Notes under the pieces: model-generated
The model's input: the letters and a program-made list of their open reading frames with translations, nothing else
Database searches by the model: none
Told to the model about the DNA's origin: nothing
Part shown: positions 1,788-48,887 of the stretch, in pieces
How positions within the stretch are numbered: the stretch's first letter is position 1
How the letters are laid out: each line of letters begins with the position of its first letter
Assembly (NCBI RefSeq): GCF_001194135.2
Contig: NC_068982.1
Coordinates: forward strand, 103,966,420-104,019,381
Source: Octopus bimaculoides
Taxonomy: Eukaryota
Direction of reading: 5' to 3'
DNA: 52,962 nt
Made by a program: the position numbers and the translations under genes

Positions 1788-1905
1788 CTAGTGTAGTGGT
1801 CCACACAGAGTCAGACAGGTCTTAGGCATTCTGTAAATCCATGTGTGTATCAATGGCATAATTAGTACAAATTGCACAGGGTATCATGTTGTATACAAAA
1901 AAGAA
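1788..1905. repeat. Isolated fragment of the array intron unit
   Basis: gtgtagtggtccacacagagtcagacag..gtcttaggcattctgtaaatccatg...aaaaagaatgg matches the unit body in the 4.3-18.9 kb array; no exon is attached. Confidence 0.8.
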
Positions 1906-2013
1906 TGGTTACATAAGCTATCCATTCATTTTTCTCTACTACTACTATTACTACTACTACTGCACACACGCACATACATATGTATATGTATTATGTGTGT
2001 GTGTGTGTGAGTA

Positions 2014-2351: not shown

Positions 2352-2575
2352 TGTGAGAGAGAGAGAGGGAGAGAAAGAAAGGAGAGAGAGAGAGAAAGAA
2401 AGGAGAGAGAAAGAAAGGAGAGAGAGAGAGAGAAAGAAAGGAGAGAGAGAGAGAGAAAGAAAGGAGAGAGAGAGAGAGAAAGAAAGGAGAGAGAGAGAGA
2501 GAAAGAAAGGAGAGAGAGAGAGAGAAAGAAAGGAGAGAGAGAGAGAGAAAGAAAGGAGAGAGAGAGAGAGAAAGA
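2352..2575. repeat. Compound (AG)n/(GAAAGAAAG) microsatellite
   Basis: Directly visible; source of the spurious RE/LS-repeat ORFs. Confidence 0.95.
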
Positions 2576-3378: not shown

Positions 3379-4127
3379 AATAAAGAGTATGGTGAGATGT
3401 ACACTCACAAAATTTATTTTTTAGTTATATGCATCATATTACAATGACCTACATGTGTTTCTGCGGCAGTGGCTACTCACTGCAGCGAATGGAACCTTAT
3501 CATATTGTCAGTGCAGTTTCTTCAGGGTCTATCCATTTGATCGGAGGCGCAATGGCCCAGTGGTTAGGGCAGCAGACTCATGGTCATAGGATCGCGGTTT
3601 CAATTCCCAGACCGGGCGTTGTGAGTGTTTATTGAGCGAAAACATATAAAGCTCCACGAGGCTCCAGCAGGGGATGGTGGTGAACCCTGCTGTACTCTTT
3701 CACCACAACTTTTTCTCACTCTTACTTCCTGTTTCTGTTGTGCCTGTAATTCAAAGGGTCAGCCTTGTCACACTGTGTCATGCTGAATATCCCCGAGAAC
3801 TACGTTAAGGGTACACGTGTCTGTGGAGTGCTCAGCCACTTGCACATTAATTTCACGAGCAGGCTGTTCCGTTGATCGGATCAACTGGAACTCTCGATGT
3901 TGTAAGCGACGGAGTACCAACAACAATCCATTTGATCATCCTTGAAGTTCACTTTGAGGATGACCAAATGGACAAACTCTGATGAAGCTGCACTGACAAT
4001 ATTGCAAGGTTACATTTACAAAAGTGAGCAGTCACTGAAGCAGACACACACGTGTAGGTCATTATAATATGCTATATATAAGTATAAAATAAAATTTGTG
4101 GATATACAAGTCCCCATACACTTTATT
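3379..4127. mobile_element. Foldback/MITE-like palindrome (arms ~170 bp, 4-nt loop) interrupted by a SINE
   Basis: Left arm catattacaatgacctacatgtg...atattgtcagtgcagtttcttcagggtctatccatttg is the reverse complement of right arm caaatggacaaactctgatgaagctgcactgacaatat...cacgtgtaggtcattataatatg. Centre loop ttca at 3948-3951. Confidence 0.85.
3543..3925 (+). mobile_element. Full-length tRNA-derived SINE with 12-bp TSD
   Basis: tRNA-like A/B boxes (tggcccagtggttagg; ggtttcaattccc), (CAA)n tail, TSD atccatttgatc at 3531-3542 and 3926-3937. Second copy at 51342-51724 on minus. Confidence 0.9.
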
Positions 4128-4386
4128 CTTATTAATATTAGTTTATACTGCAGAAAATTTTTACCGTTCAGTGACGAGTACATGGAATTACTCATCAGAA
4201 GGATTCACAGAGTGACTAACAACTAAATGAAGACACAGACGCTAGATACTGATGCTTGTGGTTAGCCATTAACTAGAACTTAATTGAGAGCTAATACGGT
4301 GTCCACTTGGATAATATAACACTCCAATGGTTGAATAGATGGTTCTTAATCCAGGACAAGCGAATTAATATATCTTAAATAATTAC

Positions 4387-4431
4387 CTTGTCAGCATCCT
4401 TGTCATCTTCAGGACTTAGAGAAGATGTTCC
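4387..4431 (-). CDS. Array micro-exon 13 (45 nt): GTSSLSPEDDKDADK
   Basis: attttacag|GGA...AAG|gtaatt; phase 0/0, no stop. Confidence 0.75.
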
Positions 4432-5064
4432 CTGTAAAATAAAATGGAAGCATATATATTTATGATTCCATTAATGTAGTAAATATATTTTTTGATTTTA
4501 AATAGTACAACATTTAAACTGATAAGTGTAGAGTTCATACACAGTCTGACAGTTGTCTACTGGTCTTAGGCATTCTGTAACTCCATATATGTATTAATGG
4601 TATAATTGATACATATTGCAAAATGCATAATTTTCTATATAAAAAAGAATGGAAAGCTCAGTGTATCACATGTATCTCAATAGCATGTTTCTTTATGACG
4701 AATGCAAAGTACATTATACAACAATTCATAATTCTGCATTGTCACATAACTCTTATTTAATCAGGTGATATTCAGCAACCATTCCATGAAATACAATGGA
4801 TCTCTGGGGATTGAGGTCTTAAGGTCTTTATCAACATAGATTTGACTACAGTTTACCCAGTATCACCTGAGGAAATGGGATTGTTCAGCAACAAAGAGAA
4901 ATTACGCAATGTTGAGTAATGTAGTTGCAGTTTGCACTGATAATAAATAATCACACTGTTGAGATGCATGTAATGACGTTTTGAGCTATTCATTCAATTT
5001 TGTTTAATACACAGTGTAACTCAGTGCTAGAAGTGTTGTCCCACCCACAGGTAACAATAGAATT

Positions 5065-6143
5065 TCCATGTACCCTACCCCTAGAATCCAAACTACATCT
5101 CCTCTCCTAAACTGCATTACTTCTATTTCTTACAATTCTTCTTCATACACTATGATTTTCTTCCACTTCCCATCCTTGCCTTCAGTGCCCTGCTCACTGT
5201 ACTGCTGCTTTCCCCATCCCTCTCTTTATTTCCAGGTTCCCACCAGCCACTGCATTCCCACTCCATTCCCTACTTGCATCTTCTTGGCAAAACCTGGCCA
5301 CATATGTTATGTCTCTGTACCTTGAGGGCATGTCCTGGCAATTGCTCCCATTTATCTCTCTTCCTTACTTTGTCACTATGCACTGAATCCCATTCCTTGT
5401 GTGCATATCCTGGCACTTCACCACTATCTCTCTGCTGCTCTCTCTCTTGCACTCTTGCTGTCATCCACTCTCTATTTCTCTTTCCCTGGCTCTTCCTTTT
5501 GGTTGGGTAACAATATATCTCCTCTACAGCAGCACACCTGTTCCAGCCCTCATTTTTGATTGCTTTCTCTGTCTTCTTCTCCTGCACTCCTCACTGGCTA
5601 GGTAACTAAGTCTTTCCTTTACAGCAACACACATTTCTATCCTCATTCTTGTACCCTCGCTTTCCCTCTCTTTCTCTTCCCCCCCTCTCTCTCTTGGCTG
5701 AGTAACCATGTATCCGCTATATAGCAGACACCTGTTTCTGCCTTTCTATTTCTCTGTCACATTCTAATCTTTCATCAGCTGATGCAAGATCACCTCCTCT
5801 AATGTCTCTACCCATCTGAAAATTCCTTTTCTTGCAAGTTACTTAGTGACCCTGCTGGTGCCACCATAAAGAGCAGCCAGTCTACACTGTGAAGTGGTTC
5901 GCATTTGAAAGGGCATCCAGCTGTAAAACCGATGCCAAAACTGACTTCACATGTGCTGGTGCCACATAAAAAGTACTCAGTCCTCTCTACAGGGTGGCTG
6001 CTGCTAGGAAGGGCAACCAGCAGTAAAAACCATGCCTAAACAGACACAGCAGCCTGGTGTTGTCTTCTACCTGGCCGGCTCCCGTCAAACTGTCCAACCC
6101 ATGCCAGCATGGTAGAAGGAGGTTAAATGATAGTGATGATGAT
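5065..6143 (+). mobile_element. CT-rich repeat ending in RTE-type tail, inserted in array intron
   Basis: Ends with aggaagggcaaccagcagtaaaaacc...gttaaatgatagtgatgatgat; similar CT-rich body plus tail at 44930-45672; interrupts the array unit. Confidence 0.65.
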
Positions 6144-6249
6144 GACACACGTGCACGCGCACACACATACACACACAAACAATGGTACAGATGGTTAAAT
6201 AGTTGCTTTAAATCCAGGACAAGCAAATTAATATAGCTTTAATAATTAC

Positions 6250-6297
6250 CCTGTCAGGACTCAGGCGTGATTCTCTAGGACTTAAGGCAGATCCTCT
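6250..6297 (-). CDS. Array micro-exon 12 (48 nt): RGSALSPRESRLSPDR
   Basis: ttttgctttacag|AGA...AGG|gtaatt; phase 0/0. Confidence 0.75.
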
Positions 6298-6977
6298 CTG
6301 TAAAGCAAAAGGAAAGTGTATATATTTATGATACTATTAAGAAAGTAAATATATTTCTTGATTTTAAACAGCACAATTGCTCAGTGAAGAATCTATACAG
6401 AGTCAGACAGTTGTCTACTGGTCTTAAACATCCTGTAAATCTATGTATGTATCAATAGCATAATTGGTACATATTGCAAAGTGCATTATTTTGTATACAG
6501 AAAAAGAATGGAAAGCTCAACATATCACCACATGCATTTCAATAGCATGGTTATTAATGACGAATGCAAAGTACATTAAATAACATTACATAATTTTGCA
6601 TTGTCACATAACAATTCTGTTTCATCAGGAAACCTTCAGCAACCATTCTGTGAAATGCAATCAATCTATGGAGAAAAAGATCTTTATACTCATAGATTCG
6701 ACTGTGTTTTATCTAGTATAGCCTAAGGAAAATTTGTGGTTATGCAACAATATGAAATTACGTAATGTTAAGCAATGTACATTGCTCTGATAGTAGATAA
6801 TTGCACTGTTAAGATGTTTTGAGCTCTCCATTAAATTTTCTTAACCACACACACACACACACGCACACACAACACAAAACAGACGCACACACACATGTAC
6901 ACTCATATGATGTTATGATAGTTGAATAGTTGCATTTCAATCCAGGACAAGCAAATTTATATATCTTAAATAATTAC

Positions 6978-7025
6978 TTTGTCAGCATTCACGAGGTTAT
7001 CTTTGGTCATAATGACCAATTTTCT
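6978..7025 (-). CDS. Array micro-exon 11 (48 nt): RKLVIMTKDNLVNADK
   Basis: tttagtttacag|AGA...AAA|gtaatt; phase 0/0; visible in the ORF track as LQRKLVIMTKDNLVNADKVII. Confidence 0.75.
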
Positions 7026-7806
7026 CTGTAAACTAAATATATATNNNNNNNNNNNNNNNNNNNNNNNNNNNNNNNNNNNNNNNNNNNNNNNNNNNNNNNN
7101 NNNNNNNNNNNNNNNNNNNNNNNNNNNNNNNNNNNNNNNNNNNNTATATATATATATATATATATATGATTCTAATGGTATAGTAAATATATTTCTTGAT
7201 TTTAAATAGTTCAACATTTAAATTAGTGAGTGTAGTGGTCCATGCAAAGCTAGAGAGTTGTCTACTGGTCTTAGGCATTCTGGAAACCCACGTATGCTAC
7301 AATAGCATAATTGATACATATTGCAAAGTGCATCCTTTTGCTTAAAAAATATAACACCACATGCATTTCTATAGCATGTTATTTATTACAAATACAAAGT
7401 ATATTATTTAACAGTACATAATTCTGCATTGTCTCAGAGCCATACCATTTCATCAGATGATATTCAACAATTCCATGAAACACAATCTATGGGAATAAAG
7501 ATCTTTATCCTCGTAGATTTGACTGCACTTTACCCAGTATCACCTGAGGAAATGTTCTGGCTTTGCAACAATGTTCAATTACGTAATGCTATATAATGTA
7601 TTTTGCACTGATAATAAAGAATCACAATGTTAAGATGTGTGTAATGATGTTTTGAACTATCCATTCAGTTTTCTTTACCACACACATGCGCACACACACA
7701 CACAAAGACACATGCATACACACGTGCACTCACACTTACACAATGGTATAGGAGGTTGAATAGTGCTTTTCAGTTCATGACAAATTAATACAGCTTTAAT
7801 AATTAC

Positions 7807-7845
7807 CTTTTCAGCATCCTTGTAGTCTTCTTTGGCAGAATTTTT
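7807..7845 (-). CDS. Array micro-exon 10 (39 nt): KNSAKEDYKDAEK
   Basis: ttttattttacag|AAA...AAG|gtaatt; in-frame 9-nt deletion relative to the 48-nt copies. Confidence 0.75.
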
Positions 7846-8412
7846 CTGTAAAATAAAATGAAAGCATATATATTTACGATTCCATTAATATAGCAAATAT
7901 ATTTCTTAATTTTGAATAATACAACATTTCAATTGTTCAATATAGTGGTTTATACACAGTCAGACAGTTGTCTATTGGTCGGAGTCATTCTGTAATTCTA
8001 TGTATGTGTCAAGGACATAATTGGTACATATTGCATTGTGCATGGTTTTGTATAAGAAAAAGAATGGAAAGCTCAACATATCACCACATGCATTTCAATA
8101 GCATGTTATTTATTACAAATGCAAAGTACATTATATAACATTACATAATTCTACATTGTCACAGAGCCATACCATTTCATCAGATAATATTCAACAACCA
8201 TTCCGTGAAAGATAATCAATCTAGGGGTATAAAAAGCTTTATCCTCATAGATTTGATTGCATTTAATCCAGTATTACCTGAGGAAATATTCTAACTGTGC
8301 AACAATGTTCAATTATGTAATGTTATGTAATGTACTTTGCACTGATAACAAAGAATTACAATGTTTAGATGTGTGTAATGTTGTTTTGAACTATTCATTC
8401 AGTCTTCTTTAC

Positions 8413-8450
<38 letters not shown>

Positions 8451-8562
8451 CACTCACACATACACAAATACATACAAACTCACAAACACACTTACATAAT
8501 GGTATAGGAGATTGAATAGTGCTTTTCAGTTCATGACAAATTAAAACAACTTTAATAATTAC

Positions 8563-8610
8563 CCTTTTAGCATCCTTGTAGTCTTCTTTAGAGCTTATGG
8601 CAGATTTTTT
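8563..8610 (-). CDS. Array micro-exon 9 (48 nt): KKSAISSKEDYKDAKR
   Basis: ttttattttacag|AAA...AGG|gtaatt; phase 0/0. Confidence 0.75.
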
Positions 8611-9300
8611 CTGTAAAATAAAATGAAAGCATATATATTTACGATTCCATTAATATAGCAAATATATTTCTTGATTTTAAATAATACAACATTTAAATTG
8701 TTCTATTAGTGGTTTATACACAGTCAGACAGTTGTCTACTGGTCTTAGACATTCTGTAATTCCATGTATGTGTTAATGACATAATTGGTACATATTGCAT
8801 TGAGCATGGTTTTGTATAAAAAAGAGTATGGAAAGCTCAACATATCACCACATGCATTTCAATAGCATGTTATTTATTACAAATGCAAAGTATATAACAT
8901 TACATAATTCTGCATTGTCACAGAGCCATACCATTTCATCAGAAAATATTCAACAACCATTCAGTGAAAGCTAATCAATCTAGGGGTATAAAGAGCTTTA
9001 TCCTCATAGATTTGACTGCACCTGAGGAAATGTTCTAACTGTGCAACAATGTTCAATTATGTAATGTTATGTAATGTACTTTGCACTTATAAGAAAGAAT
9101 TACAATGTTAAGATGTGTGTAATGATGTTTTGAACTATCCACTCAATTTTCTTTACCACACACATGCGCACTCACATACACAAATACACATGCACACATG
9201 CACACACACAAACACACAAACACACACACTTACACGATGCTATAGGAGATTGAATAGTGCTTTTCAGTTCATGACAAATTAATACAGCTTTAATGATTAC

Positions 9301-9348
9301 CTTTTCAGCATCCTTGTAGTCCTCTTTAGAGCTTATGACAGATTTCTT
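9301..9348 (-). CDS. Array micro-exon 8 (48 nt): KKSVISSKEDYKDAEK
   Basis: ttttattttacag|AAG...AAG|gtaatc; phase 0/0. Confidence 0.75.
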
Positions 9349-10029
9349 CTGTAAAATAAAATGAAAGCATATATATTTATGATTTCATTAATATAGCAAA
9401 TATATTTCTTGATTTTAAATAATACAACATTTAAATTGTTCTATTAGTGGTTTATACAGTCAGACAGTTGTCTATTGGTCTTAGACATTCTGTAATTTCA
9501 TGTATGTATCAATGACATAATTTGTACATATTGCATTGTGCATGGTTTTGTATAAAAAAGAGAATGGAAAGCTCAACATATCACCACATGCATTTCAATA
9601 GCATGTTATTTATTACAAATGCAAAGTATATAACATTACATAATTCTGCATTGTCACAGAGCCATACCATTTCATCAGATGATATTCAACAACCATTCCA
9701 TGGAAGACAATCAATCTATGGGGATAAAAAGCTTTATCCTCATAGATTTGACTGCATTTAACCCAGTATAACCTGAGGAAAGGTTTTAACTGTGCAACAA
9801 TGTTCAATTATGTAATGTTATGTAATGTACTTTGCACTGATAACAAAGAATTACAATGTTTAGATGTGTGTAATGTTGTTTGGAACTATTCATTCAGTCT
9901 TCTTTACCATACACATGCACACACACATACATAAATACATACAAACACACACACACACTTACACAATGGTATAGGAGATTGAATAGTGCTTTCCAGTTCA
10001 TGACAAATTAAAACATCTTTAATAATTAC

Positions 10030-10077
10030 CCTTTTAGCATCCTTGTAGTCTTCTTTAGAGCTTATGGCAGATTTTTT
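10030..10077 (-). CDS. Array micro-exon 7 (48 nt): KKSAISSKEDYKDAKR
   Basis: Identical to the 8563-8610 exon; canonical AG/GT. Confidence 0.75.
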
Positions 10078-10568
10078 CTGTAAAATAAAATGAAAGCATA
10101 TATATTTATGATTTCATTAATGTATCAAATAATTTTTTTTGTTTTTAAATAGTACAACGTTTATATTGTTCTATGTAGTAGTTTATATACATTTAGACAG
10201 TTAATCAGGTGATATTCAGCAATCACTCATTGAAATACAGTCAATCTTGGAGAATAAAAATATTTATCCTCAAAGATATGACTGCATTTACTCAGCTTCA
10301 CTCAAGTAAGCTTCGTAGTTATGCAACAATGTGGAATTATGCAATATTATGTAACATACTTTATATTGACAATAAATAATTACACTGTTGAGACATGTGT
10401 AATAATGTTTTGAGTTATCCATTCATTTTTTTACTACACACACAAACACACAGAAACACAAATACATCCACACACTAACACACACACACACACACTCAAT
10501 GGCATAGATAGTTGAATAGTTGCTTTTCAATCCAGATGAGCAAATTGATATATATGTTTAATAATTAC

Positions 10569-10616
10569 CTTGTCAACATTCAGGTGTGTTTCTCTAGAAC
10601 TTACAGCAGATTGTTT
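10569..10616 (-). CDS. Array micro-exon 6 (48 nt): KQSAVSSRETHLNVDK
   Basis: cctttgttttacag|AAA...AAG|gtaatt; phase 0/0. Confidence 0.75.
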
Positions 10617-11289
10617 CTGTAAAACAAAGGAAAGCACATATATTCATATTTATATATTAACATGATTCCATTAATGTAGTAAATATATATCTTGATTTCA
10701 AATAGTACATTTAAACTGGTCAGTGAAGAGTCCCCACAGAGTCAGACAGCTGACTACTGGTCTTGGGCATTCTGTAAATCCATATATGTATCAAAGGCGT
10801 AATTAGTACATATTTCAAAGTGCATCATTGTGTACAGTGTAAAAGAATGGGGAGCTGAACATATCAGATGTACCTCAATAGCATGGTTATTTCTGACAAA
10901 TGCAAAGGACATAATATAGCATTACATAATTCTGCATTGTCACATAACAATTCCATATAATCAGGTAATATTCAGCAATCACTCATTGAAAAACAAACAT
11001 TTTTTTGAGAATAAAAATCTTTATCCACATAGATTTCACTGCAGTTTACCCAGTATCACCTGAGGAAACAGTGGTTTTGCGACAATGTAAAATTACGTAG
11101 TGTTGAGTAATGTACTTTTCACTGATAATACATAATCACACAGTTGAGATGTCTGTAATGATGTTTTGAGCTATTCATTCATTTTTTTATCACACACACA
11201 CACACACACACGTGTGCGCATGCACACACACACATACACAAACACACAATGAATAGTTGCTTTTCAATCTAAGAAAAGCAAATTAATAT

Positions 11290-11490
11290 CTACTATAATA
11301 ATACTCTTATGTATTTCTTCGCCACAACATATGAATGAGAAAGGAAGGGATGATAGATGAATAAGGAAGGAAGGGGTGATGGCAAACTTGGTAGTGGGAT
11401 GATGGCAGTTATACGGTAAAAAAAAAAAATCAAACAGCACTTCAACTCTGCGTGAGTATATGTGTGTGTACATAAAAGGGAGTTATGTAA

Positions 11491-11532
<42 letters not shown>

Positions 11533-11724
11533 AATGGAAGTGGGATGGTGAATATTCAATGCTGAAAACAAAAGCCAAACAGCTTTTCAACTCTGTGTGA
11601 GTATATGTGTGTGCATGTACAAGGGAAGTATGTAAGTGTTTCTATCTATAATTATTTTGTACCTCATTTATCTATAAAATACTACAATTAGCCGTCATTT
11701 TTGTCAGCACGGGGCCAGCAAATC
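11290..11724 (+). mobile_element. Non-autonomous Helitron-like insertion in array intron
   Basis: Splits the unit consensus gcaaattaatatatctttaataattacc; begins tctactataata, contains (TG)n, ends near gcacggggccagc. Family assignment from terminal resemblance only. Confidence 0.5.
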
Positions 11725-11734
11725 TTATAATTAC

Positions 11735-11782
11735 CTTGTCAGCATCCTTGTAGTCATCTTTAGAACTTTTGGCAGATTTTTT
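11735..11782 (-). CDS. Array micro-exon 5 (48 nt): KKSAKSSKDDYKDADK
   Basis: cattttgcag|AAA...AAG|gtaatt; phase 0/0. Confidence 0.75.
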
Positions 11783-12476
11783 CTGCAAAATGAAATGAAA
11801 GCATATATATTTATGATTCCATTAATGTAGTAAATATAGTTTTTGATTTTAAATAGTACAACATTTAAACTGATGAGTGTAGAGTCCATACATTGTCAGA
11901 CACTTGTCTACTGGTCTTAGGCATTCTGTAAATCTATGTATGTATCACTGGCATAACTGGTACATATTGCAAAGTGCATCATTTTGTATACAACAAAAGA
12001 ATGGAAAACTCAACATATCACCACATGCATTTCAATAGCAGGATTATTTATTATGAATGCAAAGTACACTATGTAACATTACATAACTCTGCATTGTCAC
12101 ATAACCACACTTCTTCATCAATTGATATTCAACAATCATGCATTGAAATGCAATCAATCGTTGGGGATGAAGATCTTTATCCTCATAGATATGTCTGAAG
12201 TTTACCCAAGTATTACCTGAGAAAATGTCAAGGTTATGCCAGGTCATGAAATCACATAATGTTATATAATGTACTTTGCACTGATAATAAAGAATCACAC
12301 AATTGAGATGTGTGCAATGATGTTTTGAATGATCCATTTAATTTTTTTTTGATACACACAGACCCCCAAACATACACACCCACACACACAAACAAACACA
12401 CACACAATGGTATAAATGGTTGAATAGTTGCTTTTCAATCCCTGGACAAGTAATTTAATATATCTGTAATAATTAC

Positions 12477-12524
12477 CTTGTCACCATCCAGGCTACCATC
12501 TCTGGAACTTAAGGCAGATTTTCT
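12477..12524 (-). CDS. Array micro-exon 4 (48 nt): RKSALSSRDGSLDGDK
   Basis: ttcgttttacag|AGA...AAG|gtaatt; phase 0/0. Confidence 0.75.
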
Positions 12525-13252
12525 CTGTAAAACGAAAGGAAAACATATATGTTCATGATTCCATTTATGATTTTAAATTGTACAACATTTAAATTGCTTA
12601 ATGCAGCAGTCCATATGGAGTCAGAGATCGGTCTACTCGTCTTAGGCATCATGTAAGTCCATGTATGTATCAATGGCGTAATTGGATACATATTGCAAAG
12701 TGCATCATTTTGTGTAAAAAAAAAGAGAAAGCAAAGCTCAACATATCACCACATGCATTTCAATAGCATGGTTATTTATTAAAAATATAAAGTACATTAT
12801 ATAACATTACATAATTCTGCATTGTCACATAACAATCCCATTTTATCAGGTGATATTCTATAGCCATTTCATGAAATACAATCAATCCATGGTGATAAAG
12901 ATGTTTATCCTTATAGATTTGCCTGCATTTAACCCAATATTACTGGATGATATGTTGTGGTTATGCCAGAATATGAAATTACGAAATGTTATGCAGTGTA
13001 TTTTATATTGATAATACATAATCACATGGTTGAGATGTGTTTCATGATGTTCTGAGCTATCCATTCAATTTTCATTGTCACACACATGCATTCACACACA
13101 CACACACAGAACACACACACACAAACAAACAAACACACACACACTCACATACACACACACACACACACACTCACACATACACAACAGTATAGATGGTTGA
13201 AGAGCTGCTCTTTAATCCAGGATAAGCAAATTATTATATCTTTAATAATTAT

Positions 13253-13795
13253 CCTGTCAGTATCAATGTGATGACCTTTTATTATGATAAAAGCAAAATT
13301 CTGTCTGTCTAGGATCTCTGCGTCTCAGTCTACATTTGTTCTACATGGACATAATAGACCTTTTTTGAAATCAGGATGATCCCGGCATTGAAAATTTGCC
13401 CTTGATTCTTCAACATCCAGCATTGGGATCTGATTTAAAAGTATTTTGTTTGCTACTTGTAGCAGGTAGAGCTTGGCTGATTCATGTCATCTTGGTTGGC
13501 ATTTGTTTGATGACATCAGAGATCAAGTGGGAGATAAATTACATTCGCTTCATTAATTTTATGTCAAGACAAGAACTTTGACACAAATTGGCCAACATTT
13601 GGGATTCAACTTGGGACATGAAGAATAGACTGGTTGCATGACAGATTCAATTCTCATCCATCTTTAACCTCTGATCAAACACCACCGGGCCATATAGTCA
13701 TTATAGATGTATTATAGTCCTCCATAGGAGAGCTAGTTTAAATGTCTGCACAGAGTGTAGCTTTTAAGAAAGTTAGAAATAAAGGCAGATTTTCT
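13253..13795 (-). pseudogene. Array exon split by ~500-bp insertion (3' half ..DTDR with donor gt>at; 5' half RKSAFIS.. running to TAG)
   Basis: GATACTGACAGG|ataatt at 13253 (donor mutated); acceptor half at 13795 reads RKSAFISNFLKSYTLCRHLN* (13733-13795). Confidence 0.7.
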
Positions 13796-14491
13796 CTGTA
13801 ATACAAAAGGAAAACATATATTTATGATTCTATTAACATTGTAAATATATTTCTTGATTTTAAATAGTACAGCATTTAAATTAGTCAGTAATGAGTTCAT
13901 ACAGAATCAGAGAGTTGTCTACTGGTCTTAGGCATCCTGCATATATCATATATACACTTATGTATATATCAATGGCATAATTGGTACATATTTCAAAGTG
14001 CATCATTTTGTATAAAAAATGAGAAATGGAAGCTCAACATATCATCACATGCATTTCAATAGCAAGTTTATTATTACAAATGCAAAGTACATTTTGTAAC
14101 ATTATATAATACTGCATTGTCACATAACCATGCCATTTCATTAGGTGATACTCAGCAATTATGTATTGAAATACAATCAAACTTTGGGGCAAAGATCTTT
14201 ATCTTCATAGATTTGCCTGCATTTTACCCTGTATGAGCGGAAGATATGTTGTGATTATGCCAGAATGTGAATTTACATAATGTGTACTTCATATTGATAG
14301 TAAAAATGATTACATTGTTGAGATGTGTATAATGATGTTTTGACCTATAGATTCAGGTTTCTTCACCTCACACACACACGCATACACACAGAACACACAC
14401 ACACACAACAAACACACACACAATGATATAAATGGTTGAATAGTTGCTTTTCAATCCTGAACAAGTACTTTAATATATCTGTAATAATTAC

Positions 14492-14536
14492 CATGTCAGC
14501 ATCCAGGGTATCATCCATAGAACTTAAGGCAGATCT
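14492..14536 (-). CDS. Array micro-exon 3 (45 nt): RSALSSMDDTLDADM
   Basis: ttttgttttacag|AGA...ATG|gtaatt; in-frame 3-nt deletion. Confidence 0.75.
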
Positions 14537-14995
14537 CTGTAAAACAAAAGGAAAACATATATGTTCATGATTCCATTTATGATTTCAAATTGTACAACAT
14601 TTAAATTGCTTAATGCAGCGGTCCACATGAAGTCAGAGACCTGTCTACTCGTCTTGGGCATCATGTAAGTCCATGTATGTATCAATGGTGTAATCGGGCA
14701 CATATTGCAAAGTGCATCATTTTGTGTAAAAAAAAAGAGAAAGCAAAGCTCAACATATCACCACATGCATTTCAATAGCATGGTTATCTATTAAAAATAC
14801 AAAGTACGTTATATAACATTACATAATTCTGCATTGTCACATAACAATCCCATTTGTTATTCAGTAGCCTCAAATTGTTATGTGACAATATCAAATGGGA
14901 TTGTTATGTGACAAACACCACCAGGCAATATAGTCATTATAGACGTATTATAGTGATGCTATTTAACTCTCGTTAGTTTTAGTCCTCCATAGGAG

Positions 14996-15058
14996 CTAGT
15001 TTAAATGTTTGCACAGAGTGTAGCTTTTAAGCTGGTTTGAAATATAGGCAGGTATTCT
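14996..15058 (-). pseudogene. Stop-containing array exon derivative RIPAYISNQLKSYTLCKHLN*
   Basis: Intact acceptor ttttgttttacag, 63 nt to TAG, no array-type donor. Confidence 0.65.
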
Positions 15059-15410
15059 CTGTAAAACAAAAGGAAAACATATATTCAAGATTCCATTAAT
15101 GTAGTAAATATATTTCTTGATTTTAAATAGTACAGTATTTAAATTAGTCAGTAAAGAGTTCATACAGAATCAGAGATTTTCCTACTGGTCTTAGGCATCC
15201 CGTATGTATCATATAAAATGGGATTGAAAAGAACTTTGGGACAAATTGAAATTTAACTTGGGACGCGAATGATTGCATTACTAATTCTTATTAATCTTTA
15301 ACCTCTCATCAAACACCACCGGGGCATATAGTTATTATAGACGTATTATAGTCATGCTATTTAGCTCTCCTTAGTTTTAGGCAACAAACCCTATTAGCCC
15401 TCCATAGGAG

Positions 15411-15473
15411 CTAGTGCAAATGTCCACACAAAGTGTAGCTTTTAAGAGAGTTAGAAATAAAGGCAGATTTTCT
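15411..15473 (-). pseudogene. Stop-containing array exon derivative RKSAFISNSLKSYTLCGHLH*
   Basis: Intact acceptor ttttgttttacag, 63 nt to TAG, no array-type donor. Confidence 0.65.
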
Positions 15474-15735
15474 CTGTAAAACAAAAGGAAAACACATATT
15501 CATAATTCTATTAACTTAGTAAACAAATTTCTTGATTATAAATAGTACAACATTTAAACTGGTCAGTGAAGAGACCATACAGAGCCAGAGTGTTGTCTAC
15601 TGGTCTTAAGCATCCTGTATATATCAATGGCATAACTGGTACATATTGCTACATATTGCATGATTTTGTGTAGAAAAAGAGAATGGAAAGCTCAACATAT
15701 CACCACATGCATTTCAACAGCATGATTATTTATTA

Positions 15736-17177
15736 CTAGCAGAAATACCCAGCTTTGCCCGGGTTAAAGAGATTAATGAAATCTAAAAACGCCTTCTAGA
15801 CTACGCAACCCTCAACTGTTAGTAGCTACGATACCATATTTCTACATTAATAACTCTCCAATCCATGCCAGCATGGAACATAGATATTAAGTGGAATGCC
15901 AGTCTCTCATCTGGGAGGGCCTTGAAATCAATGTTACCAACTGGGGACTATGTGTGTCGCAGTGATAATAAAAAGACTCAAAGGAGGTCTGCAACGAAAT
16001 AATTTTACTCAACACTTTGCAAGTGTATCAGTGGAGGCAAAGATGCGTCTCATTTACTTGACAATTTATGCACCACATTGCAGAAATCACAATGTAAGTA
16101 TATCTGAAAGGGTAGTCTTACACTGTTGTACTGTTGAATTACAAATAATGCTCATCTGTTATGTNNNNNNNNNNNNNNNNNNNNNNNNNNNNNNNNNNNN
16201 NNNNNNNNNNNNNNNNNNNNNNNNNNNNNNNNNNNNNNNNNNNNNNNNNNNNNNNNNNNNNNNNNNNNNNNNNNNNNNNNNNNNNNNNNNNNNNNNNNNN
16301 NNNNNNNNNNNNNNNNNNNNNNNNNNNNNNNNNNNNNNNNNNNNNNNNNNNNNNNNNNNNNNNNNNNNNNNNNNNNNNNNNNNNNNNNNNNNNNNNNNNN
16401 NNNNNNNNNNNNNNNNNNNNNNNNNNNNNNNNNNNNNNNNNNNNNNNNNNNNNNNNNNNNNNNNNNNNNNNNNNNNNNNNNNNNNNNNNNNNNNNNNNNN
16501 NNNNNNNNNNNNNNNNNNNNNNNNNNNNNNNNNNNNNNNNNNNNNNNNNNNNNNNNNNNNNNNNNNNNNNNNNNNNNNNNNNNNNNNNNNNNNNNNNNNN
16601 NNNNNNNNNNNNNNNNNNNNNNNNNNNNNNNNNNNNNNNNNNNNNNNNNNNNNNNNNNNNNNNNNNNNNNNNNNNNNNNNNNNNNNNNNNNNNNNNNNNN
16701 NNNNNNNNNNNNNNNNNNNNNNNNNNNNNNNNNNNNNNNNNNNNNNNNNNNNNNNNNNNNNNNNNNNNNNNNNNNNNNNNNNNNNNNNNNNNNNNNNNNN
16801 NNNNNNNNNNNNNNNNNNNNNNNNNNNNNNNNNNNNNNNNNNNNNNNNNNNNNNNNNNNNNNNNNNNNNNNNNNNNNNNNNNNNNNNNNNNNNNNNNNNN
16901 NNNNNNNNNNNNNNNNNNNNNNNNNNNNNNNNNNNNNNNNNNNNNNNNNNNNNNNNNNNNNNNNNNNNNNNNNNNNNNNNNNNNNNNNNNNNNNNNNNNN
17001 NNNNNNNNNNNNNNNNNNNNNNNNNNNNNNNNNNNNNNNNNNNNNNNNNNNNNNNNNNNNNNNNNNNNNNNNNNNNNNNNNNNNNNNNNNNNNNNNNNNN
17101 NNNNNNNNNNNNNNNNNNNNNNNNNNNNNNNNNNNNNNNNNNNNNNNTACATCTCTTTCTCTCTCTCTTTCTCTCTT

Positions 17178-17210
<33 letters not shown>

Positions 17211-17528
17211 GAAAGTATCTGTCATTACAGTATCGAATGTGATTGTTTCAGTTAGTGGAATAATTTCATTTTTAAAGTGAAAGTATTTGACATGAGTGTT
17301 TTTGTTTCACTTTTGACAGGTAATACTTAAATAGTGGAGGAGATATTATGTTGCCGTGGGCTCGAACTCTGCAAGAAGTTAAACATTTTTTTTGACTAAA
17401 ACACAACTGGAACCCTAAGTAAGGCATCTGTAAAATTTGAATGAAATTGGTTCCGTAGTTCTCGAGTTTTAGGGATTCACACAGACAGACAGACAGACAC
17501 ACATTCTCATTTTTATATATATAGATAG
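15736..17528 (+). mobile_element. Helentron/HINE (DINE-1-like) non-autonomous element, partly gapped
   Basis: Starts tactagcagaaatacccagctttgcccggg, ends aaattggttccgtagttctcgag...(CAGA)n...tttttatatatatagatagat; splits the unit consensus ttatttatta^tgaatgcaaag. Confidence 0.7.
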
Positions 17529-17793
17529 ATGAATGCAAAGTACATTATATAACATTATATAATTCTACATTGTCACATAACCATACCATTTCATTAGGTG
17601 ATACTCAGCAATTATGCATTGAAATACAATCAAATTTTCAGAATAAAGACCTTTATCTGCATAGAAATGTCATGATTATGCCAGAATGTGAATTTACATA
17701 ATGTTATGTAATGTACTTTACATTGATAGGAAATATTCACATTGTTGAGATGTGTATAATGATGTTTTGACCTATACATTCAGGTATCTTTAC

Positions 17794-17825
<32 letters not shown>

Positions 17826-17956
17826 CGCACACGCACACACACACACACACACATACATACATACACATTCACACATATGCACAGATAATGGCATAGTTGG
17901 TTGAATAGTTGCTTTTCAATCCAGGACAAGCAATTTAATATAGCTGTAATAATTAC

Positions 17957-18001
17957 CCTTTCAGAATCCAGATCTTCTTTGGAACTTAAGCCAGATATTC
18001 T
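17957..18001 (-). CDS. Array micro-exon 2 (45 nt): RISGLSSKEDLDSER
   Basis: ttttgttttacag|AGA...AGG|gtaatt; in-frame 3-nt deletion. Confidence 0.75.
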
Positions 18002-18630
18002 CTGTAAAACAAAAGGAAAACATATATGTTCATGATTCCATTAATGTAGTAAATATATTTCTTGATTTTAAATAGAACAGCATTTAAACTGGTGAGTTTA
18101 GTGGTCCACACACAGAGTCAGACAGTTGTCAACTAGTCTTTCGTACTCTGTAAATCCATGTATGTACCAATAATATAATTGGTACATATTGCAAAGTGAA
18201 TCACTTTGTGTAGAAAAGTGAATGGAAAGCTCAACATATCACGACATACATTTCAATAGCATGGTTATTTATTATGAATGCAAAGTAAGTTCTGTAACAT
18301 TACATAATTCTTCATTGTCACATAACAATCCCATTTCATCAGGTGATATTCAGTAGCCATTCAATGAAATGCAATCAGTCTTTGGGGATAAAGATGTTTA
18401 TCCTCACAGATTTGCCAGCATTTTACTCAGTATTACTGGCTGAAATGCGTTGATTATGCCAGAATATGAAATTACTGAATGTTATGCAGTGTACTTTACA
18501 TTAGTAATAAATAATCACACGGTTGAAATGCATATAATGATATTTTGAGCTATCCATTTTATTTTGTTTACTACATACATACATACATACATACATAAAT
18601 ACATGCATACGTACGTACATACATGCATGC

Positions 18631-18663
<33 letters not shown>

Positions 18664-18762
18664 TACATAAATATATATATATATAAATATACTATGGTAT
18701 AGATGGTTGAATAGTTACTTCTCAATCAAGGACAGGAAAATTGATATATCTTTAATTATTAC

Positions 18763-18810
18763 CCTCTCAATAACTCTGCCCTGCTCTTTAGAAATTGTGG
18801 CACCTTTTCT
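18763..18810 (-). CDS. Array micro-exon 1 (48 nt): RKGATISKEQGRVIER
   Basis: ttttcttttgcag|AGA...AGG|gtaata; phase 0/0; most divergent copy. Confidence 0.75.
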
Positions 18811-18906
18811 CTGCAAAAGAAAAGGAAGGCATACATATTTATGATTCTATTTACATCGTAAATATATTTCTTGATTTTAAATAGTCCATATAAATTTCTT
18901 CAAAAT

Positions 18907-19638
18907 ATGAGGGAAGTTAAAAATTACCCACACTTTTGCCATAACAGATCGTTATTACTGTCACACTTCCTTCTGTGCATGCGTGTTCATAGATGGTACT
19001 ACTGTGCTCATGTGATCAAAGTTTGAGCCTGATCACACCATTTATTGTTCTGGCTTTACAGTGTAAGTATGGCTGCTCCACTAGCAATGTGCACCAAAGA
19101 AGAACAAAGAGCAGTGACCCGATTTCTTTGGTCGGAAGGTGTGTCAGGTGCTAAAATTTATCAGAAGATTTTAAACACAATTGGTTGATGGTTTCAACAG
19201 TCTGGGCGACCATGTGTGGACGTGCATTGTCAAGCAGCAACAAAACTTTCTTCAACAATAGGCTTCAGTGTTTGGTGTGAATTGCTGGCTTCAATTTGTT
19301 TACCAGCAAAGCACTGTATCTTGCACTGTTGATCATACAACCCTTTTCCAGGTAGGCATCCAGTATGGGCCCTTTTGAGTTAGAATCACATTTCCTGTGG
19401 AAGACCGAGATTTGAATTTCTTCATCACTGGCAAGCCAGGATGTTTTCACTCCATACTCTGTCTTTTAGATTCTGCCTCATAATGATGGACCCACGTTTC
19501 ATCTCCAGTGACTATTTTGCTCAAAAATTCCTCACTCTCATTGTTGTAGCGATCAAGTAAATGTCAGTAGACCTCAAGACATTTGCACTTGTGCTCTGCA
19601 GTAAGCTCTCTTGGCACCCATCTTGCACAGACTTTATG
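18907..19638. mobile_element. Rearranged mariner transposase relic
   Basis: Plus strand from 19069: MAAPLAMCTKEEQRAVTRFLWSEGVSGAK (HTH). Minus strand 19638-19262: HKVCARWVPRELT...IVTGDETWVHHYE (linker and first catalytic Asp). Confidence 0.85.
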
Positions 19639-20380
19639 CTTGGGTAAATATATTTTTACACCTCATTGACTTTATGTTTGGGTAAATATATTTTTACACC
19701 TCATTGATCTAGAAACGTGCGTCCACAATTAATCAAGGTCGGGTAAATTCGTTATTTTTTCCTTTTTTGCCTTTGTAGTTTGCAAGTATTACTGTTTTTG
19801 GGAGTTGTATTTTAGTAGAGAAATAGTAGTTTTGGCTGCTATTTCTAATTTTCGGTGTGTGGTGAAGCAATACTTGCTGAACCCTAAATTTTAAATTGTG
19901 TTTATATATTTACTGATAATGGTTTTTAACACACCGAACTACTTGGTAAAATTACTAATTATCAATTAATTATTAATTTTTACCCTATGTCTGTATGAGT
20001 TTATTTGCTCCCTGATAGTAAACTGCAGTTTTCTGCAGGATTACTCGTAGTGCACATTGGTAATTGAAGAATGATATGATTTTCTCGCTTGTCTATATGA
20101 ATACAGAAATGCTGTTCTTGGATAATCATTTTGATGTCGCCTGATTGAATTAATTATTCTTTTATTAGCATTCTCGGATATATAATTTTGAAAAATTGTG
20201 CTGATGAAGGATATATGCTTGGATAAATATATTTTTACACCTCATTGATCTAGAAACGTGCGTCCACAATTAATCAAGGTCGGGTAGATTCGTTATTTTT
20301 TCCTTTTTTGCCTTTGTAGTTTGCAAGTATTACTGTTTTAGGGAGTCGAATTTTAGTAGAGAAATAGTAGTTTTGGCTGG
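19636..20380 (+). mobile_element. Penelope-type partial tandem terminal repeat (pLTR)
   Basis: ~165-bp direct repeat (19675-19845 and 20215-20380) plus a 35-bp third start; the right copy carries a hammerhead motif, typical of Penelope pLTRs. Confidence 0.6.
20194..20271 (+). ncRNA. Type I hammerhead ribozyme motif
   Basis: AATTGTG-CTGATGA-[45 nt]-GAAA-CGTGCGT-C^-CACAATT: both core boxes, perfect 7-bp stem I, short ACG/CGT stem III; stem II is long and imperfect. Confidence 0.6.
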
Positions 20381-20427
20381 GGACAAACTACCTGTATCAA
20401 CTTGCGATAAAATTAAGTAGTAATTTT

Positions 20428-21602: not shown

Positions 21603-21609
21603 ACATACC

Positions 21610-27237: not shown

Positions 27238-27425
27238 CATCATCATCATCATCATCGTTTAACGTCCGCTTTCCATGCTAGCATGGGTTGGACGATTTGA
27301 TTGAGGACTGGTGAAACCGGATGGCAACACCAGGCTCCAATCTAATTTGGCAGAGTTTCTACAGCTGGATGCCCTTCCTAACGCCAACCACTCAGAGAGT
27401 GTAGTGGGTGCTTTTACGTGTCACC
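27238..27425 (-). mobile_element. RTE-type 3' tail element
   Basis: Reverse complement of the aggaagggcatccagctgtagaaac...(GAT)n motif. Confidence 0.85.
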
Positions 27426-41959: not shown

Positions 41960-42204
41960 CTGTTGCAAAAGTAAAAAAATTTTAAGAAAAAAGCAAATCA
42001 ATCAGCTATTTATTGATTAACAACTGATAACAATAACAAAGTTTCACTGTATAAACATAGACTTTTAATCTGTTTCTCATAGCAGCCAAACTATATCACC
42101 CAATGAAAGCAGCATATGTAAATATTAGTAACTTCTCTGAACAATCAATAAATGGAGGCCAAGATCACAATGTCTTCAGGCATAGTTTTATCATTGTAAT
42201 TAAT

Positions 42205-48668: not shown

Positions 48669-48887
48669 TAATGTCCACTTTTCCATGCTTGCATGGGTCA
48701 GATGGAGTTTATTGAAGCAGAATTCCTATGGCTATATGTCTTTTCTGTCGCCTCTTTCCAAGTAAGGTAATAATTTCTCAGTGGTCAAGCAAGCTTTTAC
48801 AGAATCTTGGAAATGAAGGACAGTGGCACTCGTTTATAACTATTATGTGATGTCAAGACAAGGAGAGGCAAACATACATGCACAAAG

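What the first reader, a model, noticed from the sequence alone, without database searches (positions are those of the whole stretch)
4387..18810. Hidden tandem micro-exon array: 13 frame-preserving exons encoding a repeated charged phospho-peptide in an unrecognised gene
What looks like a ~0.8-kb satellite is an exon-duplication array. Each unit carries a minus-strand micro-exon with a polypyrimidine-AG acceptor and a gtaat donor. All 13 intact copies are phase 0/0, stop-free and a multiple of 3 long: ten are 48 nt, and the three with deletions (two of 45 nt plus one of 39 nt, besides the 45-nt terminal copy counted among the variants) lose only whole codons, which argues for selection on frame. 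Joined in order: RKGATISKEQGRVIER-RISGLSSKEDLDSER-RSALSSMDDTLDADM-RKSALSSRDGSLDGDK-KKSAKSSKDDYKDADK-KQSAVSSRETHLNVDK-KKSAISSKEDYKDAKR-KKSVISSKEDYKDAEK-KKSAISSKEDYKDAKR-KNSAKEDYKDAEK-RKLVIMTKDNLVNADK-RGSALSPRESRLSPDR-GTSSLSPEDDKDADK. Symmetric phase allows any subset to be included, so this could be a combinatorial or length-tunable cassette system; the ORF track misses it entirely.
Basis: partly seen in the sequence, partly recalled or inferred. Interest (0 to 1): 0.88.

Follow-up and report, generated by a model that had tools for sequence, protein, structure and literature searches.

The report
Tandem array of in-frame micro-exons
A 14.5-kb tandem repeat carries 13 intact 39-48-base segments that have splice signals and evolve like in-frame coding mini-exons of an unannotated gene. 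No transcript or protein evidence could be obtained, so it is a strong candidate and not a proven gene.

Summary
All 13 peptides lie on the minus strand at the stated coordinates. Each follows an invariant CAG acceptor and precedes an invariant GTAAT donor, inside a ~740-bp tandem unit (array 4331-18883).

Corrections:
- Sizes are nine of 48 nt, three of 45 nt and one of 39 nt, not ten of 48 nt.
- Both assembly gaps lie in introns, and the unit sequence is colinear across each.

Evidence for coding:
- Frame 0 is open in 13/13 copies; the other sense frames are open in 3/13 and 0/13.
- All 4 exon indels are multiples of 3, against 3 of 32 in introns (Fisher p = 6e-4).
- A neutral simulation leaves all copies stop-free in only 5-7% of runs.

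The exon is nevertheless the fastest-evolving 48-nt stretch of the unit, and amino-acid-changing substitutions are as frequent as silent ones. Selection therefore keeps the frame and splice signals, not the residues.

Three protein searches found no product, and no known family matches. Splicing, phosphorylation and combinatorial exon use are untested.

Most likely these are real cassette exons for a disordered, charged, serine-rich spacer. That is a new member of a known kind (titin PEVK, caseins, schistosome micro-exon genes).

The parts
4331..18883 (-). Whole tandem array of ~740-bp units, each an exon plus a ~690-nt intron. It holds 17 exon positions: 13 intact, 3 truncated, and one 3' remnant belonging to truncated copy X3.
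   Evidence: Mapping one unit (8611-9348) against the window with blastn; repeat families.
18763..18810 (-). E1, 48 nt, RKGATISKEQGRVIER. It is the most divergent copy. Its upstream flank is unique beyond about -110, which marks the 5' edge of the array.
17957..18001 (-). E2, 45 nt, RISGLSSKEDLDSER (3-nt deletion)
15737..17530 (.). Foreign insertion of ~1.8 kb in the intron after E2. It contains assembly gap 16165-17147. The unit is colinear across it (unit position 467 to 469).
15460..15473 (-). X1, truncated exon copy: an intact acceptor and ~14 nt of exon, then foreign sequence. In-frame stop after 20 codons; no donor within 190 nt.
15045..15058 (-). X2, truncated exon copy with the same junction as X1
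14492..14536 (-). E3, 45 nt, RSALSSMDDTLDADM (3-nt deletion)
13782..13795 (-). X3, truncated exon copy (5' part). A ~517-nt insert (13265-13781) separates it from its 3' remnant.
13251..13264 (-). 3' remnant of the X3 exon (last 12 nt). Its donor has mutated from GT to AT.
12477..12524 (-). E4, 48 nt, RKSALSSRDGSLDGDK
11735..11782 (-). E5, 48 nt, KKSAKSSKDDYKDADK. A ~477-nt foreign insert lies in its downstream intron (11250-11726).
10569..10616 (-). E6, 48 nt, KQSAVSSRETHLNVDK. Its downstream intron lacks unit positions 418-615.
10030..10077 (-). E7, 48 nt, KKSAISSKEDYKDAKR (exon identical to E9)
9301..9348 (-). E8, 48 nt, KKSVISSKEDYKDAEK
8563..8610 (-). E9, 48 nt, KKSAISSKEDYKDAKR
7807..7845 (-). 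E10, 39 nt, KNSAKEDYKDAEK (9-nt deletion)
7045..7144 (.). Assembly gap in a (TA)n run, 19 nt upstream of the E11 acceptor. It is intronic, and both sides are in register with one unit.
6978..7025 (-). E11, 48 nt, RKLVIMTKDNLVNADK. This is the weakest copy: a TA-rich tract in place of a pyrimidine tract, A at donor position -1, and the longest branch in the tree.
6250..6297 (-). E12, 48 nt, RGSALSPRESRLSPDR. A ~1.1-kb insert lies in its downstream intron (5014-6145).
4387..4431 (-). E13, 45 nt, GTSSLSPEDDKDADK. Unit homology ends about 56 nt downstream, at 4331, which marks the 3' edge of the array.
8821..8892 (-). Most conserved block of the intron (0.87-0.94 mean pairwise identity), shown here for one unit: ...CATGCTATTGAAATGCATGTGGTGATATGTTGAGCTTTCCATTC. 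It contains a UGCAUG motif. There are 11 copies in the array.
   Evidence: (family D15)
1794..1908 (-). Degenerate fragment of a further unit (intron positions ~518-642, 74% identity). It has no exon and lies 2.4 kb beyond the array.

Best explanation
The 13 segments are real, or only recently retired, phase-0/0 coding cassette exons of a gene that current annotation misses.

Origin (inferred from the array's edges): an ancestral 48-nt exon and about 690 nt of its intron were multiplied by unequal crossing-over.

What selection keeps (shown):
- the acceptor, consisting of a pyrimidine tract, a CAG and a conserved ~100-nt upstream region that contains a candidate branch site;
- the GTAAT donor;
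- an open frame;
- a length that is a multiple of 3.

What selection does not keep (shown): the residues. The exon is the fastest-changing part of the unit, and nonsynonymous changes are at least as frequent as synonymous ones.

Function (inferred): each exon adds a 13-16-residue hydrophilic module with the pattern [KR]-x-S-A-x-S-S-[KR]-[DE]-x-x-x-D-A-[DE]-[KR]. The modules build an intrinsically disordered, charged, serine-rich linker. Length, charge and perhaps phosphorylation would matter in such a linker, and exact sequence would not. Diversifying selection on the modules is possible. Because every exon is symmetric, skipping any of them keeps the frame, so length variants by alternative splicing are possible but not shown. 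The truncated copies lack donors and would be skipped.
For: - Splice signals: CAG and GTAAT are invariant in 13/13 copies, while only 25-42% of flanking columns and 18% of exon columns are invariant. The one destroyed copy has lost its donor (GT to AT).
- Frame: 13/13 copies are open in frame 0, against 3/13 and 0/13 in the other sense frames. No other window of the unit reaches this.
- Stops: a neutral simulation on the inferred tree (89 substitutions) leaves all 13 copies stop-free in only 5-7% of runs.
- Indels: the 4 indels in the exon (-3, -3, -9, -3) are all multiples of 3. In introns, 3 of 32 gap runs of 30 nt or less are. Fisher p = 6e-4.
- Rate: exon distance exceeds upstream-intron distance in 64 of 78 pairs (0.31 against 0.23).
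- Rate on an intron-only tree: 79 nonsynonymous and 15 synonymous substitutions. The nonsynonymous rate per site is 2.05, the synonymous rate is 1.60 and the intron rate is 1.31. The nonsynonymous rate exceeds the intron rate with bootstrap p = 3e-4.
- Rate across the whole unit: the exon has 57 substitutions per 48 columns. Intron windows average 35.8 (sd 9.7), and none of 467 reaches 57.
- No structured RNA explains the conservation: no Rfam family and no consensus fold.
- Product: 202 aa, 47% charged, 20% Ser+Thr, 16% hydrophobic, with 17 S/T-x-x-D/E motifs.
- Array edges: E1 has a unique upstream flank and E13 a unique downstream flank, as expected if an exon was duplicated inside an existing intron.
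Against: - No protein in a 5.8-billion-sequence collection contains these peptides or the candidate neighbouring exons.
- No start exon, terminal exon or host gene was identified in 53 kb.
- Three or four of 17 copies are broken and have persisted for long; they are 86-90% identical to each other (family D8).
- The nonsynonymous/synonymous ratio is about 1.3 and not significantly above 1, so nothing shows that the peptide sequence matters.
- Each single test is modest. The stop-free test gives p of about 0.05.
- K/R at the exon ends can be a by-product of the splice consensus (AAG or AGG before GT).
- The window is dense in transposable-element fragments.
- The best-conserved sequence is intronic.
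Confidence: 0.55

Rival explanations
1. The segments are non-coding exons of a long non-coding or host transcript. They would be spliced, which keeps AG/GT, but not translated. The functional part would be intronic, for example the 70-nt conserved block. This is the arrangement of tandem small-RNA host-gene arrays of the SNORD116 or C19MC type (from my own knowledge).
For: - The exon is the least conserved part of the unit, and an intronic block is the most conserved at 0.87-0.94.
- The nonsynonymous/synonymous ratio is about 1.
- No protein was found.
Against: - 4 of 4 exon indels are multiples of 3, against 3 of 32 in introns (p = 6e-4).
- 13/13 copies have an open frame (p of about 0.05-0.07).
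- No Rfam family reaches threshold anywhere in the window.
- The conserved blocks have no consensus fold or covariation: -1.5 and -6.3 kcal/mol.
Confidence: 0.17
2. The array is a relic. An exon with its intron was amplified inside an intron, or the whole gene died. The copies are no longer spliced, or only one or two are, and they are decaying neutrally. Their intact look would reflect youth and shared ancestry.
For: - Three truncated copies, a remnant and several foreign insertions lie in the array.
- No annotation or protein was found.
- The exon changes at or above the intronic rate.
Against: - Units differ by 20-45%, so there has been ample time for decay. Even so, no full-length copy has a stop, a frameshift or a splice-site change.
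- Neutral decay does not predict an exon that is faster than its own intron.
- Neutral decay does not predict indels restricted to multiples of 3.
Confidence: 0.2
3. The array is an ordinary satellite or transposon-derived tandem repeat. The AG...GT pairs and the open frame would be chance features copied along with the unit.
For: - The window is repeat-rich.
- A fragment of the unit lies outside the array at 1794-1908.
Against: - The signals are kept while the sequence between them diverges by up to 50%.
- The frame statistics argue against chance.
- No other copy of the exon-bearing part of the unit exists elsewhere in the window.
Confidence: 0.06

Closest known systems
Schistosome micro-exon genes (MEGs)
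   Same: Most of the coding region is made of very small symmetrical exons, so exon skipping gives in-frame protein variants. MEGs also show accelerated evolution and many transposon insertions at their loci (PMC4350168). Here the exons are symmetric, evolve faster than their introns and sit among insertions.
   Different: MEGs are reported as restricted to platyhelminths and encode secreted proteins with a signal peptide (PMC4350168; the second point also from my own knowledge). MEG exons are not a tandem array of one homologous unit. Here the exons are 39-48 nt, all paralogous, and no signal peptide or flanking exon is known. There is no sequence similarity to any known protein.
Titin PEVK exon array
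   Same: It consists of many short, highly repetitive exons that arose by tandem duplication, sometimes helped by LINE insertions. The exons are alternatively spliced to tune the length of a disordered segment, and standard gene finders are known to miss them (PMC6469411).
   Different: PEVK exons are rich in P, E, V, K and A (ratio at least 0.54). The peptide here scores 0.38. No titin-type domain exons were seen in the window, and no homology was found.
Alpha-s1 and alpha-s2 casein genes (CSN1S1, CSN1S2)
   Same: They have an extremely fragmented coding region of many small exons made by exon duplication. Some of these exons encode serine phosphorylation clusters, and in-frame exon skipping is frequent (PMC12470106).
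   Different: They are vertebrate milk proteins with a signal peptide and SSSEE-type clusters. Their exons are not arranged as a regular ~740-bp tandem repeat. Here there are only single S-x-E/D and S-x-x-E/D motifs, and no homology.
Tandem small-RNA host-gene arrays (SNORD116/115, C19MC) and the avian fast troponin-T P-exon array (from my own knowledge, not checked in papers here)
   Same: In the host-gene arrays, each repeated unit has a short exon with conserved splice sites and a conserved intronic element. In the troponin-T array, tandemly duplicated in-frame micro-exons each add a short charged peptide.
   Different: No structured small RNA was found in the introns. The troponin-T exons are 15 nt, and the peptide has nothing else in common with this one.

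Membership tests
Schistosome-type micro-exon gene (MEG) | Most of the coding region is made of very small symmetrical exons | tested here: inconclusive
   All 13 exons are symmetric (phase 0/0; 39-48 nt). The rest of the coding region is unknown, and the sizes exceed the limit of about 36 nt that I recall for MEGs.
Schistosome-type micro-exon gene (MEG) | Accelerated evolution of the coding sequence | tested here: met
   The nonsynonymous rate per site (2.05) exceeds the intron rate (1.31), p = 3e-4. The nonsynonymous/synonymous ratio is about 1.3 among paralogous exons. The exon is the fastest of 467 windows. This compares paralogues, not orthologues.
Schistosome-type micro-exon gene (MEG) | Secreted product (signal peptide) and variant pools made by alternative splicing | not testable with these tools
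   No first exon was identified, and no transcript data were available.
Schistosome-type micro-exon gene (MEG) | Sequence membership in one of the described MEG families; reported as restricted to platyhelminths | tested here: not met
   No protein with any similarity was found. The window looks molluscan by its repeats, though the taxon was not verified.
Titin PEVK array | Exons rich in P, E, V, K and A (ratio at least 0.54) | tested here: not met
   P+E+V+K+A is 0.38 of the joined peptide (threshold from PMC6469411).
Titin PEVK array | Lies within a titin-like gene (flanking Ig/Fn3 exons) | tested here: inconclusive
   Pfam scans covered the joined peptide, two candidate exons and ten other ORFs or translated fragments from the window. 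They gave only a reverse-transcriptase fragment. The window was not scanned exhaustively.
Casein / SCPP-type genes | Signal-peptide exon and SSSEE-type multi-phosphorylation clusters in small duplicated exons | tested here: not met
   There is no SSSEE cluster. Twelve single S-x-D/E motifs are present. No signal-peptide exon was found.
Small-RNA host-gene tandem array | A conserved structured snoRNA or miRNA in each unit's intron | tested here: not met
   No Rfam match reaches the gathering score, and the sub-threshold hits all fall on microsatellites. The consensus folds are -1.5 and -6.3 kcal/mol with no real covariation.
Generic tandemly duplicated cassette-exon array (coding) | Intact splice signals, a conserved frame, and lengths that are multiples of 3 across paralogous exons | tested here: met
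Generic tandemly duplicated cassette-exon array (coding) | Exons are joined in mature mRNA and translated | not testable with these tools
   No transcriptome was available. Protein searches were negative.

The most novel reading that the evidence does not exclude
A cephalopod counterpart of the schistosome micro-exon genes. In this reading, a lineage-specific gene has a coding region built from a tandem array of symmetric micro-exons. The exons are under diversifying selection and are spliced in varying subsets to give a population of related charged peptides or protein variants. Each unit would carry conserved intronic control elements, including a UGCAUG-containing block. This would be convergent evolution of the MEG strategy outside flatworms.
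Probability: 0.15. Interest if true: 0.75.

Novelty: new member of a known kind. Interest (0 to 1): 0.45.

Why it matters
If the exons are spliced and translated, this is a gene that standard annotation misses entirely. It would also be an unusually clean case in which the frame and splice signals are conserved while the encoded residues change faster than the introns. The many paralogous exon-intron units at one locus offer an internal test bed for three questions. How are micro-exons defined? How do exon arrays expand? Can selection act on the length and composition of a disordered segment and not on its sequence? It also warns that repeat masking and assembly gaps can hide coding arrays in large, repeat-rich genomes. 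If the exons are not spliced, this is an ordinary decaying duplication.

Tried and rejected
- Protein evidence. The joined 202-aa peptide, a less repetitive 125-aa subset, and a set of candidate neighbouring exons were each searched against 5.8 billion proteins, with no hit. The first search reached 4999 word candidates. The second had only 16 candidates and still found nothing.
- Exhaustive HMMER search of cluster representatives. Structure prediction carries the same restriction in its description and was not attempted.
- Other assemblies of the locus. Exact look-ups of two window ORFs were not on record.
- Pfam and PDB sequence searches of the joined peptide gave only chance-level matches.
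- Small-RNA host hypothesis. Rfam found nothing at gathering score, and the sub-threshold hits were microsatellite artefacts. Consensus folding of the upstream flank and of the most conserved intronic block gave no structure. ARAGORN found no tRNA.
Neither resembles the unit beyond chance (z = -1.3 and 1.1). Neither has a database match or a Pfam hit.
- A simple scan for other exon-like segments on the minus strand gave many unsupported candidates and no further charged symmetric exons outside the array.
- A plus-strand ORF over the conserved intronic block (MESSTYHHMHFNS...). The copies differ in frame, so it was rejected as coding.
- A literature search for octopus microexons found nothing about this locus.

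Full report
**1. Observation.**
Each segment follows a T-rich tract ending in CAG and precedes GTAAT. Across the 13 copies the CAG and the GTAAT are invariant, as are A at +7 and T at +8. By comparison, only 42% of upstream flank columns, 25% of downstream flank columns and 18% of exon columns are invariant.

The segments sit in a tandem repeat with a unit of about 740 bp. Tandem Repeats Finder misses it because the period exceeds 500.

The sizes are nine of 48 nt, three of 45 nt and one of 39 nt.

**2. Anatomy of the array.**
Mapping one unit against the window gives this order along the minus strand:
- E1 and E2;
- a ~1.8-kb foreign insertion;
- truncated copies X1 and X2;
- E3;
- truncated X3 with a ~517-nt insert and a 12-nt 3' remnant;
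- E4 to E13.

The three truncated copies share one junction. Each has an intact acceptor and about 14 nt of exon, followed by unrelated sequence. They are therefore duplicates of a single disruption. Each reaches an in-frame stop after 20 codons, and no donor-like site lies within 190 nt. The orphaned 3' remnant has lost its donor (GT to AT).

Other foreign inserts lie in the introns after E5 and E12, and the intron after E6 has a deletion. Homology begins about 73-110 nt upstream of E1 and ends 56 nt downstream of E13. This is what tandem duplication of an exon inside an existing intron would leave. A degenerate unit fragment without an exon lies at 1794-1908.

**3. Assembly gaps.**
Gap 7045-7144 lies in an expanded (TA)n run 19 nt upstream of the E11 acceptor. 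The sequence before it matches unit positions up to about -21, and the sequence after it matches -19 to -1. Both sides therefore belong to one unit, in register.

Gap 16165-17147 lies inside the foreign insertion. The unit breaks after ...TACTTTGCATTC at 17531 and resumes at GTAATAAATAA at 15736, going from unit position 467 to 469.

Neither gap touches an exon. Because each exon is phase 0/0, the frame does not depend on what lies in the gaps. A hidden unit in the larger gap cannot be excluded. E11's pyrimidine tract is partly unread.

**4. Is it more than chance?**
- *Frames.* Frame 0 is open in 13/13 copies. The other sense frames are open in 3 and 0 copies, and the antisense frames in 8, 8 and 4. 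In a sliding control over the unit alignment, only windows overlapping the exon in frame 0 reach 13/13 copies that are open and a multiple of 3 long.
- *Selection bias.* Every copy that retains the full exon length is intact. The broken ones were broken by a rearrangement and not by point mutation, so choosing 'intact' copies adds little bias.
- *Stops.* Evolving the reconstructed ancestor down the inferred tree with the observed number of substitutions (89 by parsimony) leaves all 13 tips stop-free in 5-7% of 20,000 runs.
- *Indels.* The exon has four indels (-3, -3, -9, -3), all multiples of 3. In the introns, 3 of 32 gap runs of 30 nt or less are multiples of 3. One-sided Fisher p = 6e-4. 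The exon count comes from the 13-unit alignment and the intron count from an 11-unit alignment.

Each test alone is modest. Together they make a neutral, untranslated history unlikely.

**5. An unexpected rate pattern.**
The exon is not the conserved part of the unit. Mean pairwise identity is 0.68 in the exon, 0.83 in the 100 nt upstream and 0.74 in the 80 nt downstream. Codon positions 1, 2 and 3 score 0.69, 0.64 and 0.72, so the third position is not the most variable.

Exon distance exceeds upstream-intron distance in 64 of 78 pairs (means 0.31 and 0.23). This includes young pairs: E3/E4 at 0.16 against 0.06, E8/E9 at 0.10 against 0.03, and E5/E13 at 0.20 against 0.08.

On a tree built from intron columns only, the exon shows 79 nonsynonymous and 15 synonymous substitutions. 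The nonsynonymous rate per site is 2.05, the synonymous rate is 1.60 and the intron rate is 1.31. The nonsynonymous rate exceeds the intron rate (bootstrap p = 3e-4). The synonymous rate does not (p = 0.26).

Over full units, the exon has 57 substitutions per 48 columns. Intron windows average 35.8 (sd 9.7, maximum 56), and none of 467 reaches the exon value.

Two caveats apply. These are comparisons between paralogues, and gene conversion could distort the trees. The nonsynonymous/synonymous ratio of about 1.3 is not itself significantly above 1. One pair goes the other way: E7 and E9 have identical exons while their flanks differ by 9%.

My reading is that selection maintains splice signals, frame and hydrophilic composition, but not residue identity. 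Diversifying selection is possible but not proven.

**6. What the conserved intronic sequence is not.**
No Rfam family reaches its gathering score anywhere in the window, and the sub-threshold hits fall on microsatellites. The conserved 100 nt upstream of the acceptor has no consensus fold (-1.5 kcal/mol). It contains a candidate branch site, CATTAAT, about 40 nt from the acceptor; this is my reading.

The best-conserved block of the intron (0.87-0.94 identity, about 240 nt upstream of the next exon) also has no convincing fold or covariation. It carries a UGCAUG hexamer, the motif bound by Rbfox splicing regulators (from my own knowledge). A regulatory role is only a lead. A plus-strand ORF over this block changes frame between copies, so it is not coding.

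**7. The product.**
Joined in order, the exons give 202 residues:
- 26% K+R, 21% D+E, 20% S+T and 16% hydrophobic, with a net charge of +11;
- 17 S/T-x-x-D/E motifs (casein kinase 2 type);
- 8 basic-x-S/T motifs, most of them created at exon junctions;
- 3 S/T-P motifs in the last two exons.

The composition is that of an intrinsically disordered segment. Phosphorylation is inferred from motifs only. The K/R at exon ends may simply reflect the splice consensus (AAG or AGG before GT). Pfam and PDB searches give only chance-level hits.

**8. External evidence.**
None could be obtained.
- Three searches of the 5.8-billion-protein collection found nothing. They used the full joined peptide, a less repetitive subset, and candidate neighbouring exons.
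- The exhaustive representative search does not accept a spliced sequence.
- Two window ORFs are not on record in the contig index.

So the gene is either unannotated or not a gene. It was not established whether this species' transcriptomes are in those collections, so the negative result is weak.

No start or terminal exon was identified.

**9. Explanation and rivals.**
Best explanation (0.55): real phase-0/0 cassette exons that encode modules of a disordered, charged, serine-rich linker. Unequal crossing-over amplified them. Selection constrains frame and splicing but leaves the sequence free or diversifying. The truncated copies are skipped.

Rivals:
- A relic array that is no longer used (0.20).
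- Non-coding exons of a host or long non-coding transcript (0.17).
- A plain satellite (0.06).

The indel and open-frame statistics argue against all three rivals. The missing small RNA argues against the host-gene model. The broken copies and the absence of any product argue against the best explanation.

**10. Comparison with what is known.**
The array works like other arrays of duplicated symmetric small exons.
- *Titin PEVK:* short repetitive exons, alternatively spliced, shaped by LINE insertions, and missed by gene finders (PMC6469411).
- *Alpha-s caseins:* many small duplicated exons, some encoding phosphoserine clusters, with frequent in-frame skipping (PMC12470106).
- *Schistosome micro-exon genes:* very small symmetrical exons, accelerated evolution and transposon-rich loci (PMC4350168).

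It is not a member of any of these. There is no sequence similarity, the PEVK composition test fails (0.38 against 0.54), there is no SSSEE cluster or signal peptide, and MEGs are reported only from flatworms. I file it as a new member of a known kind.

**11. Verdict.**
The exon interpretation is statistically supported but lacks any expression evidence. The phospho and combinatorial claims are untested. Interest is moderate (0.45): this is a good, cheaply testable candidate for a missed gene with an unusual rate pattern, but not a new kind of system.

Noticed in passing
window 8821-8892 (-) and 10 further copies (6477-6561, 8033-8117, 9533-9617, 10816-10900, 11970-12054, 12698-12782, 13994-14078, 14710-14794, 15652-15736, 18191-18275): A ~70-nt intronic block is the most conserved part of the repeat unit (0.87-0.94 identity), more conserved than the exon. 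It contains a UGCAUG hexamer, has no consensus RNA fold and matches no Rfam family. It may be an intronic splicing control element.
   Followed up: partly
window 52195-52312 (-): An exon-like segment. It has a pyrimidine-rich acceptor, then T + ATG ATG... encoding MMTTKEEFKKSIITRKHSVSSFDDFQVKTISEYLLAIKA. It ends in phase 0 at a GTAATT donor, the same donor type as in the array. It has no database or Pfam match and no significant similarity to the unit.
   Followed up: partly
It is present as described but has no support from database searches and no similarity to the unit.
   Followed up: partly
window 20600-23100 (+): A fragmented retroelement. The ORF at 22780-23097 matches Pfam RVT_1 (E = 2.4e-8). 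The neighbouring ORFs look like pieces of the same element, broken by stops or frameshifts.
   Followed up: partly
window about 19000-20600: Translated fragments with a mariner-like transposase look (...RAVTRFLWSEGV...). There was no Pfam hit at E <= 0.01, so this is unconfirmed.
   Followed up: partly
window 3540-3960 and 51300-51640: Two copies of one dispersed repeat, giving near-identical translated fragments (...FQLIRS.EQPAREINVQVAEHSTDTCTLNVVLGDIQ...). The first copy adjoins a tRNA-like stretch that ARAGORN does not call as a tRNA.
   Followed up: no
window 42874-43081, with related copies near 27311-27538, 42165-42503, 45318-45572, 48387-48686 and 5880-6120: A 66-nt tandem repeat (3.2 copies) lies within a family of SINE-like dispersed repeats. 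Their translations share ...LDALPNANHSESVVGAF....
   Followed up: no
window 2355-2575: A GA-rich 23-nt tandem repeat (9.9 copies, 93% matches). It produces spurious ORFs in several frames on both strands.
   Followed up: no
window 1794-1908 (-): An isolated, degenerate piece of the array's intron (unit positions ~518-642, 74% identity). It has no exon and lies 2.4 kb beyond the array's end. Either the array once extended further, or part of the intron derives from a dispersed element.
   Followed up: partly
window 10030-10077 and 8563-8610: Exons E7 and E9 are identical (0/48 differences) although their flanks differ by 9%. E8 and E10 pair similarly. This suggests a two-unit block duplication or local gene conversion.
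   Followed up: no
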